From NCBI RefSeq assembly GCF_001194135.2, contig NC_068991.1:22617330-22681329 (forward strand): a stretch of 64,000 bases of DNA, written 5' to 3'. Position numbers and translations under genes: made by a program. This DNA comes from Octopus bimaculoides. Its lineage: Eukaryota. Positions 1-62,833 of this stretch are shown here, in pieces. Position 1 is the first letter of the stretch; the number at the start of each line of letters is the position of its first letter. Under the pieces are notes generated by a model, which saw only the letters and a program-made list of their open reading frames with translations, was not told the origin of the DNA and ran no database searches.

Positions 1-271
1 GGTGTATTTTGGCCAGAAATATAGTAACGAAAGGGTTAATGGATGTTGAACCAATTATGCCTCTCTCTTTCTCTCTCAGATACAGTTGCTTATTTTGAGA
101 AGTTACAGGTGGGTTATGAAACGCAGTCAATTCAAAGACAACTTATGTGGAGCTTTCTTTTTGAGACAGTAAAAAATGATTACCCTCAAACCCATGCTGA
201 TGGTTCTTGAATAAATCCTCAAATCCATATTGATGCTTGTTGAATAAGTTCATTATAATGATATACCATAT

Positions 272-7240: not shown

Positions 7241-8114
7241 GCATAAACAATTTGTGTAACTAATCGAAATAGCCATCAACTCCCATACTTCCATCACGCC
7301 TACTTAATAATATTTGCATGAAGGCTTTTCAATATTTTTCCTTGGTCTGTTTCAATATTTTAATGCTGAGCTGTGCACCTCAAAGGCAAGGCAGTATTTT
7401 TGGTTAATCAGCTTTTGTGATTTTATTATTGTATCTCAGCTACTATTTATGTAAGCTGCATGCACCAACACGCTCCTGTTTTATAGCCTTGCTACCGTCA
7501 TTAGTCATGTCTCTCTAACATGATTAGAAATTTCCAACAATAAGGTAACCATTTGCAAGCACATGCATTTCATTACTAACCACTAAGAAAAATGTTTTCC
7601 AGTAGAAGCCACAGTTTATGAATCGTCTTAACTAAGTTGGCTTTGCTAATTCTTATGTTGTTAATGAAAAACAATTTGTGAATTACTGTTGTCATTTGTT
7701 TTTGTTTAATTTACTGACACTGATATTTTTGCAAAATTATCAATTTTTTAAAATTACTAATCCAAGTGTAAATATATAGAATAAGAATGCATATGAACAG
7801 AGAGGAACAAGGTTGAAATTAATTGTGAGAGCTGCCAATGCATGTAGCTCTGACTGCTGATTCCTGTTTGTTTATATACATACTTATTGAGGAGCATAAT
7901 TTTTTTATGTAAACTGATCTCAAATTTTATTAAACACAGTAATTTTTTTTTTTTTTTTTTTTGTTCATTATCAAAAACAAGTTTCTACATTTTTGAAGTA
8001 TTAGTTTAGATATTCTATTCTTCATTTCAATGTCTTCATCATTTCAGTGTCTCCACGTGTTTTATGATTACATATCACCGTATATTGCATTAATCAATGT
8101 AGTTAATGTATGTG

Positions 8115-8426
8115 NNNNNNNNNNNNNNNNNNNNNNNNNNNNNNNNNNNNNNNNNNNNNNNNNNNNNNNNNNNNNNNNNNNNNNNNNNNNNNNNNNNNNN
8201 NNNNNNNNNNNNNNNNNNNNNNNNNNNNNNNNNNNNNNNNNNNNNNNNNNNNNNNNNNNNNNNNNNNNNNNNNNNNNNNNNNNNNNNNNNNNNNNNNNNN
8301 NNNNNNNNNNNNNNNNNNNNNNNNNNNNNNNNNNNNNNNNNNNNNNNNNNNNNNNNNNNNNNNNNNNNNNNNNNNNNNNNNNNNNNNNNNNNNNNNNNNN
8401 NNNNNNNNNNNNNNNNNNNNNNNNNN
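8115..8426. other. Assembly gap; others at 26535-27125, 30777-31080, 36814-36823, 37304-37313, 39405-39414, 44146-44315, 48625-49183, 49967-50073 and 62269-62406
   Basis: Runs of N, mostly abutting microsatellites. Confidence 0.99.
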
Positions 8427-56354: not shown

Positions 56355-56406
56355 ACCATTCTTCACTGACCGAGGGAATTTAATTGAAATGGCTGATATA
56401 CCTAAG
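56355..56406 (+). CDS. PACS2: PACS exon, (R)PFFTDRGNLIEMADIPK (52 nt, phase 2-0)
   Basis: Acceptor gacttttgcAG and donor AAG|GTAAAG. Completes the split Arg codon and continues the conserved KPxLRP(F/Y)F motif. Confidence 0.92.
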
Positions 56407-56640
56407 GTAAAGGTTGTTTATTTTGTTTAACATTGTTCATTGACTTTGTCCTGTTTGGTATCATATGTTTTAATGCAAAGCCGTTTTCAAGATAAACTTA
56501 TTTCAATGCTAACCTATTTGTCTTTTAGAGATTAATGCTGTCAGAATTTATGTCTTTAATTTTACTCATCCATGGTCACCAGCCTTTATCATGTATTGTA
56601 TCATAAACTCTCATCACATACTTGGTTGGCAACATTTGGT

Positions 56641-57237
56641 ACAGATGTGTTAACCAACCCTTGCCACAGCTGTCATCACCTACCCATGCTGCAGCTGTCT
56701 CCATCAAGCTTTGCCACAGCTGTGTTCACCAACCCATGGTGCACCTGTGTTCATCAACCTATGGTGCAGTTGTGTTCACCAACCCATGGTGCAGGTCTGT
56801 TCACCACCTCATGGTACAATTGTGTTTGCCATTCCTTGGTGCAGTTGTGTTCATCAATTCTTAGCACAGCTTTGTTCACCAACCCTTGTCACAGCTGTGT
56901 TCATTAACCCTCATCACAGCTGTGTTCATTAGCCCTCGCCTCAGTTGTATTCACCAACCCTTGACACAGCTGTGTTCAGCTTTTGCCTCATCTATGTTCA
57001 TCAATTCTTGGCCCGGCTGTGTTCACCTACCCTTAGCACAGCTGTTCACCAATGCTTCACACATCAGTGATCATCAGTCCATGTAACAAGTGTGTTCACC
57101 AACCCATAACACAGCTGTGGTCACCAACTAACAGGTCAGTTGTGATTACCAATCCTTGATACAGCTATGATTATCAAACCATGACACAGCTAAAGATACT
57201 AATCTTTGGTACAACTGTTTTCACCAAACTTTGAAAC
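56641..57237. repeat. Degenerate 25-bp minisatellite (~24 units)
   Basis: Consensus ~CACAGCTGTGTTCACCAACCCTTGG; CANNTG recurs at 25-bp spacing (56667, 56692, 56717, 56742, 56767...). Confidence 0.92.
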
Positions 57238-58225
57238 GGCTGAGAAGTTAACAGTTCATTTACTGACATTGGCACTGCATTATGTCTATTCAAGGCACTT
57301 GGCTCAAGTCCACCTAAATACATACCAGAGCAGCAGCTGCAACACTAGGAATTGATGAGATGTGTTGGCATGCAATTAAGAAAAGCTACTTGTGGTAGAC
57401 CAACATCACATCCAGTGGCAGTTTTATCCCGTATCCAATTAACATTAATTGAAAATGGTATGGTTAGCTTAGATGTATGTTTCTTACTATATATGTTTCT
57501 CTTCGCCAGCATCATCCTCATCCTTTCACCATCATTATCATCATCGTCATATCACTGCTTCACTGTAGTATATCTGAACTATTGTCTCATCAGTTTTCTA
57601 CATTCTTCTTTTCTACTTGCCTACACCCAATCAGGTGAGCAATTTTGTTTTACAAAAACCTTCTCTGATCAGTAAAACCAACCAACCAACCAACCAACCA
57701 TCCAATCAACCAAATACCTGCATGCCACCTTGGTGTTTGGTATATATTCGCTGGATGAATGCAGTTGCCATTAATGTCATTGTAATTGTTTGCAGTTGTA
57801 TCTGTTGCAGTGATGCTGTGTTGTACCATTTAGTGATGAGTTGAAGATTTTGCTAAATGACAGAAAAGTCTTTTGCTACACTCCCAACAACACATTTTCC
57901 TCATTTACAAATAGTAGTCGCTTTTGCCTTTACTCCTATCCCTCAATCCTTACAGGGTTTCTGATACCCACCCACCATTGCTTTTGTCTTAACTGAGGTA
58001 GAATAAAAAATATATAGTCGCCCAGCTATCATTCAAAACCTGACATGAACAGTGGCTCTGAGATTACCTAAATTAAAAAGGTGAGTTTAAGACTCTGCTT
58101 AGAAAAATAGCTAAACACAGAAAATATATATATATTCATGATAGAGAAAATTTTCACAAAACCCTCAATGCACAAATTAAAAGTTAATTTTTTTATATAT
58201 TTAATTTTCTCTTTCTTTTGTCTAG

Positions 58226-58231
58226 ACACAG
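58226..58231 (+). CDS. PACS2: Probable 6-nt PACS microexon ACACAG (Thr-Gln), phase 0-0
   Basis: Context ttttctctttcttttgtctAG-ACACAG-GTATGA: long polypyrimidine tract, strong donor, frame-neutral between two phase-0 junctions. Confidence 0.6.
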
Positions 58232-61200
58232 GTATGAGATATTTTTTTATGAAGGTACCATGATTAGCTTCACTTGTAATACATATGTTATGCATCTTGT
58301 GTACACAATCAAAAAGGGGCAATCAAAACTGGTAGGATTCGATTTCAAACTGGTTCTGCTGCACACTATGTACTTCATACAAGTAATTTCTGTATATGTT
58401 CAGTTCAGTATCTCCATATCCCCATTTGACTGCACACTTCACTGTTAGTGCCCTTTGTCCTTTAGTATCTCTTCAGAATGAGATGCACAACAGGAGATAA
58501 CATCATAAGAAATCTTTGAAGTAACAAACCCAACATGGCCTCATATTAGGAATGAATGACTTCATTCATTATACCTCCATCAAATAATACCAATTGCCAC
58601 CTGGGGAGAAGGGTAATTACCAAATTCAAGAATTATTGGTTTGCACTGTTTCCATGGCCCTTGATAAAGCTTCTTACAGAATGTATATTGTAAAAATTTG
58701 TCCTCCAGTTTCAGATGAATGGGTAGTGTTACTACTTTAAAATTCCCTCAAATCCTACATAGTTAGGCAAATTTCCTCTAATCTTTTTGTTTTTTCTTTT
58801 TGTAACTCAGTCTATTATTTTGTTAAGTCAGTGCTTTGATAATTGTATTGATATCAATAAAGATATCCCAGGGCTGTGACTGCAACCAGTTTGCCTGTGC
58901 TATATCAAGAACTGGTCCTGCTCAACATATATAAAATGTATTTTTATCTGTAATTTCTGTATGAAAAAAAGTGTATGTGTGGCATGGTTCTTGACATAGT
59001 ATTGTTACAGTCATTTTCTCTTCACTAAGCTTTGCTTTGGGACTGTATGCTATATGATGAGTTGTTTGTTATACACTCTAGTGTAGCAAATAGTCATTTG
59101 CTCATCCATTTGATCAGTAGTATCTTTCAAGAGACAACAATCTCAAATCAGCTTCAGAGAAAAAAAAATTAGAAGTTGTGAAGTTCATGTCCTTCATAAG
59201 TGTATTATTGGAATAGACAAAACAGTTCAGAGTTTGCTGAAAGCTTACCACCAGTACTACCTTTTGCTATCTTTATAACTGTTGTGTATTGACGTAGTCA
59301 AAATATCGATTTATTCTGAGAGATGTGTATCATGGTTATAACAAGACTTGTGTGTGTGTGTGTGTGTGTGTTTATGTAGAAGGGTTGTGATTTATTGCAT
59401 TGATACCCTTTATGTTACTGGTATTTATTACATCGAACCCTGTTGGAGTTGGAACTCAACAGTGTAGGAAATTTGCATCTAGCCTAGCACTCTACTGCTT
59501 TATAACCTACCATTCTCTATTAGTATATATGCAGGGGAGACAACTATTTCGGAGTGGCTATAAAAGTAGAAGGTTGTTGATAATCCAGCATTTATGATCC
59601 AAAATTTTCTTTGACCAACCCAACTTTCATTCGGACACAACATCCTCCATTCGTTAGGGTTGACCATGTGTCTGTGCCTGGAAAGTTCCCCCTCCCCTCA
59701 AGATGTAGACTTTGGTGACATTTCTTGATTGAAAAACCAGTAGCTATCCATATAGCAAATCTCTCACCATTCCACTGAGGTTGTTCAAAAAAAGTAATGG
59801 CTGATAGAGTTTGGTAACATAGTCATTGTTGGTAAACTCAGAATGTAAAGAGCCACAAGACATTTAGTCCAACACACCAACAATTCTGTTAAATCCACTG
59901 TCTTCACTGTGTGTCTAATCTCATGTCATTCGTTTTTTAAGGTAGTAGGGTGTGATTTGATTAAGATTTGGTGGCTGTTTCCCATAGGTTGAGTGGTCAT
60001 GGAAAGTTCCACCCTTCAACTGTAGAAGCATGTGACAGAGGTTAAATAGAACAAGATGAGGTGACACAGGATAGGACTGAAGTATGAAGAAGTGATGTAT
60101 TGCAGAGCTTTCTTACTCCTGGCAGCATGGAAAAATTGCTGTCAGATCAATGTTAATGATGATGATGATGATAGTGATAGTGATGAGAATAAATTGTTTT
60201 GAAATTCAGTGTTATTTATAACTAAACTTTGAGTGACAGAGCCACTGGTTGACATCAGGTCAGATATGCAGCATTTGTCACTGCAGTGTGTCACTACATC
60301 CACCATTTGTCACTATCTACTTAGGTCATCCCGAGCAACCCTCAGAGTAGTGTCTAACTCCACAAAATACTTCCTCATTTGGGTTGGACACATGTGGCAT
60401 ATGGCCAACCAACACAAGCTGCCATCCCAGCTGAATCTTCAGAAAAGAGAATATGGTATGCAGGATCAAACTAATAAAATTGAGCAACATGACCAAACAA
60501 TCTAAGCAATGTCACATTGCTGAATCATAAAAATAACAGGCAGCATCCCAGTTTCTGAGTATCGTCATTGGTTGGGTACAAAATCTAACCAACAATAACC
60601 CAAGCCTCCTGGTACCAAAGGAGTTCAGGTAGCCCCTAAGAGCTCCAGACATTGTCTAAGTTTCACAGCTGAATAGGGAGAAGCAGAGACCCAAAGACTC
60701 AAACCTTTGTCCTCCTGCTCAGCTATAAGCAGCACCAAACATCCTTGTCCAATGAATGCACAACTGCACCAGCACACCCAAGTCTTTGTACTTGCAGCTA
60801 ATGCTGAGATATTCATTATTTATTTATACTTTAAGTCTCTTCTGAAAATACTGCTATTTGTGTGACATTTCATTTTCATGAAGCTTACAACTACCAGATG
60901 GCAGTTGATCCATGTCCCATGCCCACCCATACTAAAAGGTATGGGTGGGTATGAATCAGAATAATGTCTGATAATAAATGTCTTGAGTGATATCTAGTAC
61001 ACTCAGTTTTTTTTTTTTAAGTGTCTGTTTCTTTGAAGTCTTTTTATTCACTTAAAAAAAAAAACAAATTACTTACCCTTTCAAGATGTTTTAGGTGATC
61101 TTTCAACCTGCTATATTTGTTTTTTATTTTTTTTTTATTAAGTGTATGTACTTTTTTTAAAATCTATTTAGTTTTTATCAAAGAATTTTAAATAATGACA

Positions 61201-62414
61201 CCCTTATTCTTTAATTGTCTCTTTAGGAAAAACTTTTTTTTTTAGTACAGAACCTTCAGTAGGTTTTTGTCTTGAGTCAAAATGATTTACTCAATGTCTA
61301 ATGTTCTTTTGAATGTAATTTTTCTCTCTCATTGTGACTATAGAGTGCCACATGAAACACTTTAGTGTATTTAGGAGGGTTCTACAGGAGTGTGGTAAGT
61401 TCAGTTGCTGTTAGCATGAGAAGTGTATTTACTTTCCACTATTTCACTTCTCTCATTTCAAATTCCACCAGATTCAATTTCACTTTTCATTCTACCTAGG
61501 ATAAATACCAGTATTATTTTGGAATCAACTCAAGTCAAGTGACTTTTCCTTTCTCTCAAACAAAATTAGCCTTTTAACTAGTCCCATAACCTCCAACAAT
61601 TTCAGTTTGAATTCATCAGAGTCAATTCTTGTTTGGTCAAGAATTTAGTACTGGTTTGGCCATCTATATTAATGAAATACTTTTTTTTTTTAAGAAGTAG
61701 CTTTCAGGTTTTAAAATCAATGGATTCAAGATTATAGAATAGTGGAGAAATAAACCAAAGGGTTAATGGTTTGTATCTTGTGACTGGTGCTGAGCTATAT
61801 TTATGACAAAAGCCCTCAGTTGCAGTAGATATTAGATAGTTACAACTTATAAATGTAGAAACAAGCAGCAGTAAAGAAATCGATCAGTGCTTTTCATCTC
61901 TTTCAATATTCTCTTCAAGTCTTCTCATGGATATTGTTTGGAAAAGAATTCTACCAACCTCTCTTTCTCTAAATACGCTACACGAAGATGAAATTTTCAG
62001 CAGTGGTGCCCTTACAATTCATAGAGTTCTAGGCCTCATCAAAATGTTTTCTAAAGCTCATGCTGTATATGTGTGTGTGTGTGTGTGTGTATAAGCAAAT
62101 TAGTTAGTTAGAAAATCTCTATAAGAGGTGAAAGCAGTAGCCACACTGAGAAGTCATGCTTATTACCACTTAAATATGGCTGTGTGTTTCTAATGACCAA
62201 AGAGCATATAACATCATATCTGAACATATTACTCATTTAAATTTGGTGAAGAAGGAGCCAAGTTTAATNNNNNNNNNNNNNNNNNNNNNNNNNNNNNNNN
62301 NNNNNNNNNNNNNNNNNNNNNNNNNNNNNNNNNNNNNNNNNNNNNNNNNNNNNNNNNNNNNNNNNNNNNNNNNNNNNNNNNNNNNNNNNNNNNNNNNNNN
62401 NNNNNNTCTGCACC

Positions 62415-62650
62415 ATTTGACTAACTACACCCCTCTTTCTGCTGGAGGACTAACCATTCTCCCTCTCTCTCTCTCTCTCTCTCTGCCAGAGGACTAACTA
62501 TCCCATCTTGCTTTCTACCAGAGGACTAACCACATCCCTTCTCTTTACCAACTTAACTACTCTCTTCCCTCTCAATACTAAATAATTAACCACTCTCCCC
62601 TCCTCTTTCACATACCTGATTACTAACTCCTTCACTCCCCTTATTGGTAG
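62415..62650 (+). promoter_or_regulatory. Array of ACTAAC + polypyrimidine (+AG) units, candidate splicing-regulatory element
   Basis: ACTAAC at 62420, 62449, 62493, 62525 and 62622 (TACTAAC), each followed by a C/T tract. Sense to PACS and 120-350 nt upstream of exon 62771. Confidence 0.5.
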
Positions 62651-62770
62651 ATGGCAAACTCTCTCCCACAATGCTTAGGTGGCTAAAACTTCCTTCCAAT
62701 CAGCTCAAAAGCTGGTCTTTTCAGAAATGCCACCTTATTATCATTGTCTTTGAATTCCGTCTGTTAACAG

Positions 62771-62833
62771 GCTAGTCCCGTGAAATCTTTGAGTGAAGAC
62801 AACTACAAGAGACCCGACTCTGACACTCATGCG
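62771..62833 (+). CDS. PACS2: Probable PACS exon, ASPVKSLSEDNYKRPDSDTHA (63 nt, phase 0-0)
   Basis: Acceptor gtctttgaattccgtctgttaacAG and donor GCG|GTATGT. Open frame compatible with the upstream phase and CpG-retaining. It lies in the poorly conserved linker, so support is splice-signal based. Confidence 0.75.

What the first reader, a model, noticed from the sequence alone, without database searches (positions are those of the whole stretch)
58200..58240. 6-nt frame-preserving microexon inserting Thr-Gln next to an SPVK motif in PACS
Seen: strong acceptor and donor around ACACAG, with both neighbouring exons phase 0, giving ADIPK-[TQ]-ASPVKSL. SPVK fits the S-P-x-K CDK consensus. Known: 3-27 nt microexons are often neuron-specific and are missed by annotation pipelines; the PACS middle region is phospho-regulated. 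Inference: a tissue-specific switch tuning phosphorylation or binding in the disordered linker. No UGC enhancer is seen just upstream of the AG, so classical eMIC/SRRM control is not indicated.
Basis: partly seen in the sequence, partly recalled or inferred. Interest (0 to 1): 0.7.

Follow-up and report, generated by a model that had tools for sequence, protein, structure and literature searches.

The report
Unverified 6-nt microexon candidate in PACS
Inside an intron of a cephalopod PACS trafficking gene, six bases sit between very good splice signals and would add Thr-Gln in frame, but no transcript or conservation evidence could be reached, so it is more likely an unused look-alike than a real tissue-specific microexon.

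Summary
ACACAG (58226..58231, + strand) lies between a 17/18-pyrimidine tract plus TAG and a CAG|GTATGA donor. It sits in the 6,364-nt intron between two phase-0 PACS exons, 56355..56406 (...ADIPK) and 62771..62833 (ASPVKSL...). Inclusion would give ADIPK-TQ-ASPVKSL.

Gene identity is secure: the four window exons are 79-81% identical to cuttlefish PACS2 (CAE1271385.1).

This is the best-scoring AG-N(1-28)-GT pair on either strand of the window, but not a large outlier. Equally good frame-preserving pairs of 3-27 nt are expected 0.085 times per 64 kb, or about 0.01 in this intron.

No spliced octopus transcript and no orthologous cephalopod intron could be reached. The one cephalopod orthologue model shows the skipping junction (DVPK|GSPVK). 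RefSeq isoform sets from a snail and sea stars vary by short segments elsewhere in PACS, never at this junction. No UGC lies within 50 nt upstream and no GCAUG within 500 nt downstream.

My estimates:
- About 0.6: unused or noisily used pseudo-microexon.
- About 0.25: real microexon. The regulated-switch reading takes about 0.1 of that.

S-P-V-K is conserved between octopus and cuttlefish, but its phosphorylation is untested. Junction-read counts would settle the question.

The parts
58226..58231 (+). Candidate 6-nt microexon ACACAG; it would encode Thr-Gln in phase 0
   Evidence: Sequence; translation of C + hexamer + D.
58204..58225 (+). Candidate 3' splice site: polypyrimidine tract ttttctctttcttttgtct (17/18 Y) followed by TAG
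   Evidence: one of 6 such YAG sites on the + strand and 0 on the - strand; 11th of 3,309 AG sites by PWM.
58232..58237 (+). Candidate 5' splice site, CAG|GTATGA (7/9 to MAG|GTRAGT, G at +5)
   Evidence: Donors this good make up 138 of 3,998 GT sites on the + strand.
58184..58205 (+). Possible branch points (TTAAT at 58184..58188 and 58201..58205) inside a 41-nt AG-free zone
   Evidence: Read from the sequence. The nearest upstream AG is at 58182. These are pattern matches only.
56355..56406 (+). PACS exon C, (R)PFFTDRGNLIEMADIPK, ends in phase 0, donor AAG|gtaaag
   Evidence: 61% identity to cuttlefish PACS2 residues 304-321.
56407..62770 (+). Intron between exons C and D (6,364 nt). It contains the candidate, a 25-nt tandem array and an N gap.
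62771..62833 (+). PACS exon D, ASPVKSLSEDNYKRPDSDTHA, phase 0 at both ends, weak acceptor (11/18 Y), donor GCG|gtatgt
62774..62785 (+). Codons for S-P-V-K, a match to the [ST]-P-x-[KR] pattern
   Evidence: SPVK is also present in cuttlefish PACS2.
50339..50398 (+). PACS exon A, QRNFKQKIIALLRRFKASEE, donor GAA|GTAAGT
52538..52689 (+). PACS exon B, ALDSEADHE...STPKPQL(R), ends in phase 2
   Evidence: The protein is 100% identical in a related octopod contig.

Best explanation
Most likely this is a pseudo-microexon: a chance pairing of a T-rich tract ending in TAG with a good GT donor six bases later, inside an ordinary AT-rich, T-biased PACS intron. By default an exon this short is skipped. U2AF at the acceptor and U1 snRNP at the donor cannot both sit comfortably across 6 nt unless a dedicated enhancer system helps, and no such element is visible here. 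The normal mRNA therefore joins ...ADIPK directly to ASPVKSL..., as the cuttlefish orthologue model does. At most a small, unregulated fraction of transcripts would carry the harmless in-frame Thr-Gln. Shown: the sequence, the phases, the gene identity, the site strengths and the chance rates. Inferred: that the site is unused.
For: - Equally good frame-preserving pairs are expected 0.085 times per 64 kb of sequence with this composition, and 8% of simulated windows have at least one. The independent-rate estimate from the real window agrees.
- Another equally strong AG...GT pair (80..108, 29 nt, frame-breaking) exists in the same window.
- The candidate tops the ranking only narrowly, 31 against 30, 30 and 29.
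- Strong pyrimidine-tract acceptors are a + strand property here (6 on +, 0 on -). Two of the six are (CT)n microsatellites, so the transcribed strand breeds decoy acceptors.
- There is no UGC within 55 nt upstream, no GCATG within 500 nt downstream, and few YCAY motifs.
- Cuttlefish PACS2 (CAE1271385.1) has DVPK|GSPVK with no inserted residues.
- Physella and Asterias RefSeq isoform sets show no variation at this junction, although they capture other 2- to 15-residue differences.
Against: - For this intron alone, the expected number of decoys this good is only about 0.01 (scaled to 6.4 kb).
- Both sites equal or exceed most sites of the four real exons: all four acceptors, and the donors of exons A, C and D (exon B's donor is better, 8/9).
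- The hexamer preserves the frame and has no stop codon.
- The surrounding 900 nt are unique in the window.
- Gene predictors routinely miss 6-nt exons, so the cuttlefish model is weak negative evidence.
- PACS linker regions do carry short alternative exons in other invertebrates.
Confidence: 0.6

Rival explanations
1. It is a real alternative 6-nt cassette microexon. Its very strong polypyrimidine tract and its U1-complementary donor compensate for its size. Removal of one flanking intron first may also help, so that the hexamer is recognised together with a neighbouring exon. Inclusion inserts Thr-Gln two residues ahead of the conserved S-P-V-K in the disordered PACS middle region. That could change kinase or partner recognition, and TQ is itself an [ST]-Q motif. 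The tissue-specific switch version of this reading takes about 0.1 of the 0.25.
For: - It is the best splice-site pair among about 5,700 short AG...GT pairs on both strands.
- The intron-level chance is about 0.01.
- It is in frame and has no stop.
- The locus is unique, not a repeat.
- Plausible branch points lie 21 and 38 nt upstream.
- SPVK is conserved between octopus and cuttlefish.
- Short alternative exons exist in PACS of Physella (27 nt) and Asterias (24 nt, 45 nt).
- From general knowledge, strengthening splice sites rescues inclusion of very short exons, and annotation pipelines miss microexons.
Against: - No transcript evidence of any kind was obtained.
- The only cephalopod orthologue model skips it.
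- No event is annotated at this junction in other phyla.
- No UGC or GCAUG motifs are nearby.
- The window-level chance is 0.08, with thresholds set after the fact.
- Six-nucleotide exons are the rare extreme of the microexon class.
Confidence: 0.25
2. The strong acceptor at 58225 is used, but with a different outcome. One possibility is a longer frame-breaking poison exon using a downstream donor, for example 58255 (29 nt). Another is an alternative terminal exon. Read-through past the GT gives ...ADIPK-TQV-stop, and an AATAAA lies 630 nt downstream. Either would yield a truncated PACS lacking the C-terminal Pacs-1 domain, or a transcript destined for decay.
For: - Translation past the GT is TQV*.
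- Downstream donors matching 6-7 of 9 positions sit at 58255, 58332 and 58383, and there is a single AATAAA at 58856.
- The acceptor is among the strongest in the window.
Against: - The nearest and best donor is the one at 6 nt.
- AATAAA is expected by chance about once per 1-2 kb in DNA of 35% G+C.
- No transcript evidence exists.
Confidence: 0.08
3. It is a recursive-splicing intermediate (ratchet point or RS-exon) used to remove the intron in two steps. It would leave no trace in the mature mRNA.
For: A strong 3' splice site lies next to a 5' splice site in mid-intron.
Against: - After the first step the junction would read AAG|ACACAG. That does not rebuild a GT 5' splice site, so the 0-nt ratchet definition fails.
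- The intron is only 6.4 kb, whereas recursive splicing is characteristic of introns of tens to hundreds of kb.
Confidence: 0.02

Closest known systems
Neural 3-27-nt microexons dependent on the SRRM3/4 eMIC domain (Irimia et al. 2014; Torres-Mendez et al. 2019; cited from memory)
   Same: Very short, frame-preserving, located in a disordered region of a trafficking or neuronal-disease gene next to a possible modification site, and easily missed by annotation.
   Different: The defining UGC enhancer between the polypyrimidine tract and the AG is absent (nearest TGC at -55). Inclusion, neural bias and flanking-intron conservation are all untested.
6-nt mini-exon 17 of chicken cardiac troponin T, recognised as an exon-intron-exon unit (Sterner and Berget 1993; cited from memory)
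   Same: It has the same length and shows that 6-nt internal exons can be spliced when helped by a neighbouring exon.
   Different: In that case the neighbouring intron is very short. Here the flanking introns are 1.8 kb and 4.5 kb.
Intronic pseudoexons, i.e. decoy splice-site pairs (Sun and Chasin 2000; cited from memory)
   Same: A good-looking acceptor and donor pair deep in an intron with no evidence of use. It occurs at roughly the rate expected from composition at window level.
   Different: Its sites equal or exceed most sites of the real neighbouring exons, and it happens to preserve the frame.
Annotated short alternative segments of invertebrate PACS: Physella acuta XP_059160272-75; Asterias rubens XP_033625247/54/62/69; Asterias amurensis XP_071787095, XP_071787103, XP_071787109
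   Same: They are in the same gene family and in linker regions, and are short: 4-aa and 9-aa segments in Physella, and 2-aa, 8-aa and 15-aa segments in Asterias.
   Different: None lies at the ...PK|[AG]S... junction that is homologous to the candidate.
Recursive splice sites / RS-exons
   Same: A 3' splice site and a 5' splice site lie close together in mid-intron.
   Different: They are separated by 6 nt, no 5' splice site is regenerated after the first step, and the intron is short.

Membership tests
Alternative cassette microexon (3-27 nt) | AG acceptor and GT donor flanking 3-27 nt inside an intron of a coding gene | tested here: met
   tAG|ACACAG|GTatga, inside the PACS intron 56407..62770.
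Alternative cassette microexon (3-27 nt) | Length a multiple of 3 with no in-frame stop, given the phases of the neighbouring exons | tested here: met
   ...ADIPK-TQ-ASPVK... Exon phases were worked out.
Alternative cassette microexon (3-27 nt) | Spliced transcripts containing the exon (inclusion junctions) | not testable with these tools
   Searches returned only unspliced ORF calls. Searches found nothing on record. No read archive can be queried.
Alternative cassette microexon (3-27 nt) | Conservation of the exon and its flanking intron sequence in related species | not testable with these tools
   Only exon B of a related octopod was retrievable (L001/L002, 87.6% nt identity). No other cephalopod locus was reachable. 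At protein level the cuttlefish model lacks the two residues, which is weak evidence.
eMIC/SRRM4-dependent neural microexon | UGC motif close upstream of the 3' splice site (within about 40 nt) | tested here: not met
   the only TGC in 58100..58225 is at 58169, 55 nt from the AG.
RBFOX-enhanced neural exon | (U)GCAUG in the downstream intron | tested here: not met
   no GCATG in 58232..58800. The only TGCATG in the intron is at 57719, which is upstream.
Recursive splice site | A 5' splice site is regenerated when the upstream exon is joined to the site | tested here: not met
   The junction would be AAG|ACACAG, with no GT.
[quoted passage not shown] | Orthology of the flanking exons to PACS proteins that carry the Pacs-1 domain | tested here: met
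   - 245 hits; the best is P0004 (E = 1.5e-43).
- P0004 is PACS2 of Acanthosepion pharaonis.
- P0004 has PF10254 (E = 9.7e-152).
- 79% identity over 111 aa.
The Pacs-1 domain exons themselves lie beyond the window.
CDK / proline-directed phosphosite | [ST]-P-x-[KR] sequence | tested here: met
   One search shows SPVK, also present in cuttlefish. This is a pattern match only.
CDK / proline-directed phosphosite | Demonstrated phosphorylation of the serine | not testable with these tools
   No phosphoproteomic resource is available.

The most novel reading that the evidence does not exclude
A real, cephalopod-specific 6-nt microexon that is included without the classical UGC/eMIC or RBFOX signals, relying on an exceptionally strong acceptor and donor. 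It would place an [ST]-Q dipeptide two residues before a conserved S-P-V-K site in the PACS autoregulatory linker, giving a tissue-specific change in phospho-regulation of a cargo-sorting adaptor.
Probability: 0.1. Interest if true: 0.45.

Novelty: not a real feature. Interest (0 to 1): 0.2.

Why it matters
If real, this would be one more microexon in a gene whose human paralogues cause neurodevelopmental syndromes. It would also be an example of 6-nt exon definition without the known enhancer code in a lophotrochozoan. That would be useful, but it is not a new kind of mechanism.

If it is a decoy, as I judge more likely, it shows that splice-site strength alone cannot call microexons in AT-rich cephalopod introns. 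About 1 window in 12 is expected to hold an equally convincing frame-preserving look-alike.

Tried and rejected
**Searches for transcripts or related loci**
- Protein search with the 40-aa and 109-aa inclusion peptides returned only genomic ORF calls and no spliced octopus PACS. The word index also missed cuttlefish PACS2 even though that protein is in the collection. Absence there is therefore uninformative.
- Fishing for related-octopod contigs with 792 aa of six-frame ORFs around the hexamer found no hits.
- Exact look-ups of two window ORFs overlapping the hexamer were not on record.
- Genomic loci of cuttlefish PACS2 and amphioxus PACS2 were not on record.
- A JGI metagenome scan with exon B found no relatives.

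**Other databases and literature**
- A PDB sequence search with the linker peptide found nothing.
- Rfam on the whole window found nothing.
- Literature: no paper pairs 'microexon' with PACS1, and the one paper pairing it with PACS2 is irrelevant. A 2026 preprint uses Octopus bimaculoides splicing data, but no supplements are held.
- A search on the Logan run accession number led to an unrelated paper.

**Ideas considered and set aside**
- My first log-odds PWM for donors over-rewarded G in this AT-rich background. It ranked real donors below many decoys, so I relied on consensus-match counts and simulation instead.
- The ENA locus L003 is a non-cephalopod, mollusc-like PACS whose linker is too diverged to test conservation of the hexamer.
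- Amphioxus PACS2 reads EIPQ-TQ-VMDISDD at the equivalent position. I treat this as coincidence, since about 0.1 such matches are expected across the taxa inspected and the exon structure could not be checked.
Full report
**What is in the sequence**

The + strand at 58200..58240 reads tttaattttctctttcttttgtctAG|ACACAG|GTatgaga. The hexamer is 58226..58231.
ATACCTAAG is at 56398..56406 and GCTAGTCCC at 62771..62779.
- Reading the flanks gives exon C = 56355..56406: acceptor ttttgcag, donor AAG|gtaaag, ending in phase 0 with ...ADIPK.
- Exon D = 62771..62833: acceptor ttaacag, donor GCG|gtatgt, phase 0 at both ends, beginning ASPVKSL.
- The intron between them is 6,364 nt.
- Joining C + ACACAG + D translates to PFFTDRGNLIEMADIPKTQASPVKSLSEDNYKRPDSDTHA.

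**Gene identity**

I refined them to exon A = 50339..50398 and exon B = 52538..52689. My first boundaries for A and B were wrong and were corrected.
- A full HMMER scan of 1.84 billion representatives with the four joined exons gave 245 hits.
- The best hit, P0004 (E = 1.5e-43), is PACS2 of the cuttlefish Acanthosepion (Sepia) pharaonis, CAE1271385.1. It carries Pfam Pacs-1 at residues 366-789 with E = 9.7e-152.
- The window exons align to P0004 residues 235-342, just upstream of that domain, at 79-81% identity.
- No other PACS exon was detected in the first 50 kb of the window. That stretch is presumably one very large intron.

**Is it more than chance?**

- *Acceptor.* It has 17 of 18 pyrimidines before a YAG. 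Only 6 of 1,710 YAG sites on the + strand and none of 1,824 on the - strand reach this. Of the six, one is real exon B, two are (CT)n microsatellites, and one begins another strong pair at position 80.
- *Donor.* It matches MAG|GTRAGT at 7 of 9 positions, as do 138 of 3,998 + strand GTs. The donors of exons A to D match at 7, 8, 7 and 6 positions.
- *Ranking.* Among about 5,700 AG-N(1..28)-GT pairs on both strands the candidate ranks first, but narrowly: 31 against 30, 30 and 29.
- *Simulation.* 400 simulated 64-kb sequences from an order-4 Markov model of the window contained on average 0.085 equally good pairs of length 3, 6..., 27. Eight per cent of the simulations had at least one, and the mean was 0.0075 for exactly 6 nt. 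Scaled to this 6.4-kb intron, the expectation is about 0.01.
- *Agreement with the real window.* A rate estimate from the real window agrees, and the window contains one other equally strong pair (80..108, 29 nt, frame-breaking).

The configuration is unusual for this intron.

**Context**

- The 900 nt around the hexamer are single-copy within the window.
- Nothing in Rfam matches anywhere in the window.
- The nearest upstream AG is 41 nt away, and TTAAT branch-point-like motifs lie about 21 and 38 nt upstream of the 3' splice site.
- The nearest TGC is 55 nt upstream of the AG. There is no GCATG within 500 nt downstream, and only three YCAY motifs occur in the first 170 nt downstream.
- Read-through past the GT gives TQV-stop. 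Weaker donors lie at 58255, 58332 and 58383, and an AATAAA lies at 58856.

**Attempts to get transcript or comparative evidence**

- The indexed protein search returned only prokaryote-style ORF calls on genomic contigs for this locus.
  - The 40-aa inclusion peptide found nothing.
  - The 109-aa peptide found only exon B read together with its intron: one hit from two Logan runs of a related octopod (P0001; L001/L002, 87.6% nucleotide identity to the window), and two from a non-cephalopod animal in an ENA assembly (L003/L004).
- A 792-aa concatenate of all six-frame ORFs around the hexamer found nothing.
- Exact look-ups of two window ORFs, and of the cuttlefish and amphioxus proteins, found nothing on record.
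- A metagenome scan found no relatives.
- No paper links PACS1 to microexons, and the single paper mentioning both microexons and PACS2 does not connect them. The one preprint using Octopus bimaculoides splicing data has no held supplements.

The decisive data, junction reads and orthologous cephalopod introns, were therefore out of reach.

**What the orthologues say**

- The cuttlefish model reads ...NEISDVPK|GSPVKCVTDDNLKRTDSDSHA. When aligned with the inclusion form, it shows a clean two-residue gap exactly at TQ. This is a gene prediction, and predictors usually miss 6-nt exons, so it is weak negative evidence.
- Genomic ORF fragments from many arthropods break at ...NVP(G). Together with the mollusc and annelid proteins, this shows that the intron position after ...PK is ancient.
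- RefSeq isoform sets, which are based on RNA-seq, show short alternative segments in PACS.
  - Physella acuta X1-X4 differ by DRSP (4 aa) and by a 54-aa exon, which X3 replaces with a 9-aa segment SVLLDLSQE and X4 lacks.
  - Asterias rubens and A. amurensis isoforms differ by VH (2 aa, probably an alternative donor), by 15 aa and by the 8-aa REDFVMET.
  - None of these lies at the junction homologous to the candidate.
- Amphioxus PACS2 happens to read EIPQ-TQ-VMDISDD there. I could not check its exon structure and regard it as coincidence.
- S-P-V-K is conserved between octopus and cuttlefish. Physella has T-P-V-K a few residues further on. That gives mild support for constraint on a proline-directed site but is not evidence of phosphorylation.

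**Weighing**

From general knowledge, roughly 1-3% of introns in such genes hold a microexon of 27 nt or less. Perhaps 10-20% of real microexons would have sites this strong.
- That gives about 0.002-0.005 for 'real and this strong' in this intron.
- Against it stands about 0.01 for a decoy in this intron, or about 0.085 against about 0.01-0.02 for the whole window.
- The posterior for a real microexon is therefore about 0.1-0.3.
- The lack of enhancer motifs, the extreme shortness and the orthologue data push it down. The tendency of PACS linkers to carry short alternative exons pushes it up.

I settle on these estimates:
- About 0.6: unused or noisily used pseudo-microexon.
- About 0.25: real microexon. 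The 'regulated switch near a phosphosite' reading takes about 0.1 of this.
- About 0.08: the acceptor serves a poison or terminal exon.
- About 0.02: recursive splicing. This fails its defining test because AAG|ACACAG regenerates no GT.

**Comparison with known systems**

If real, this is an ordinary member of the microexon class, at the rare 6-nt extreme. It is comparable to the chicken cTNT 6-nt mini-exon, and it fails the UGC criterion of the eMIC-dependent subclass. If not real, it is a textbook intronic pseudoexon. Neither outcome is a new kind of system.

**Verdict**

- Observation: confirmed.
- Interpretation: cannot be decided with the data reachable here, leaning against.
- Interest: low (0.2).
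- A k-mer count of the two junction strings in existing octopus RNA-seq would settle the question.

Noticed in passing
window 80..108 (+): This is the only other AG...GT pair in the window as strong as the candidate: ctctctttctctctcAG|ATACAGTTGCTTATTTTGAGAAGTTACAG|GTgggt, 29 nt and not frame-preserving. No frame resembles PACS. It could be a decoy or an unannotated exon, and it sits at the window edge.
   Followed up: partly
window 56636..57128 (+): A tandem array of about 20 copies of a 25-nt unit (TTGGCACAGCTGTGTTCACCAACCC, 69% matches) lies in the same intron, just downstream of exon C. An (AACC)n microsatellite follows at 57676..57713.
   Followed up: no
window 40084..40512 (+): A 143-aa open frame gives a weak, sub-threshold match to Pfam DDE_3 transposase (E = 0.008, 16.5 bits against a cut-off of 28.6). 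It is probably a decayed Tc1/mariner-type element inside the large upstream intron.
   Followed up: partly
window 62269..62406 and several other N runs (e.g. near 8110-8420, 26500-27100, 48620-49200): Assembly gaps occur in a very repeat-rich, 35% G+C sequence full of (CA)n, (TA)n and (CT)n tracts, which indicates a draft scaffold. One gap lies inside the C-D intron, so the intron length is approximate.
   Followed up: no
L003 11311..11390: In a non-cephalopod, mollusc-like PACS locus from ENA assembly ERZ25071447, the exon homologous to exon C begins ACCATTTTTCACA followed by GTGAGT. This suggests a possible 13-nt exon encoding only (R)PFFT. The linker exon structure seems to vary between lineages.
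   Followed up: partly
P0047 (Branchiostoma lanceolatum PACS2, CAH1263290.1): The protein reads ...SQEIPQ-TQ-VMDISDD..., a Thr-Gln at the position equivalent to the candidate insertion. Its exon structure could not be retrieved. This is probably coincidence.
   Followed up: partly
P0009, P0152-P0154 (Physella acuta); P0062, P0157-P0162 (Asterias): RefSeq PACS isoforms differ by short segments: DRSP (4 aa), SVLLDLSQE (9 aa), VH (2 aa), REDFVMET (8 aa) and a 15-aa block. Invertebrate PACS genes do use very short alternative exons or splice sites, though not at the junction in question.
   Followed up: yes
tool behaviour: the search for homologous proteins did not list cuttlefish PACS2 as a candidate. 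That protein shares 10-15-residue exact stretches with the query and is in the collection. Negative results from that index for eukaryotic annotated proteins should not be read as absence.
   Followed up: partly
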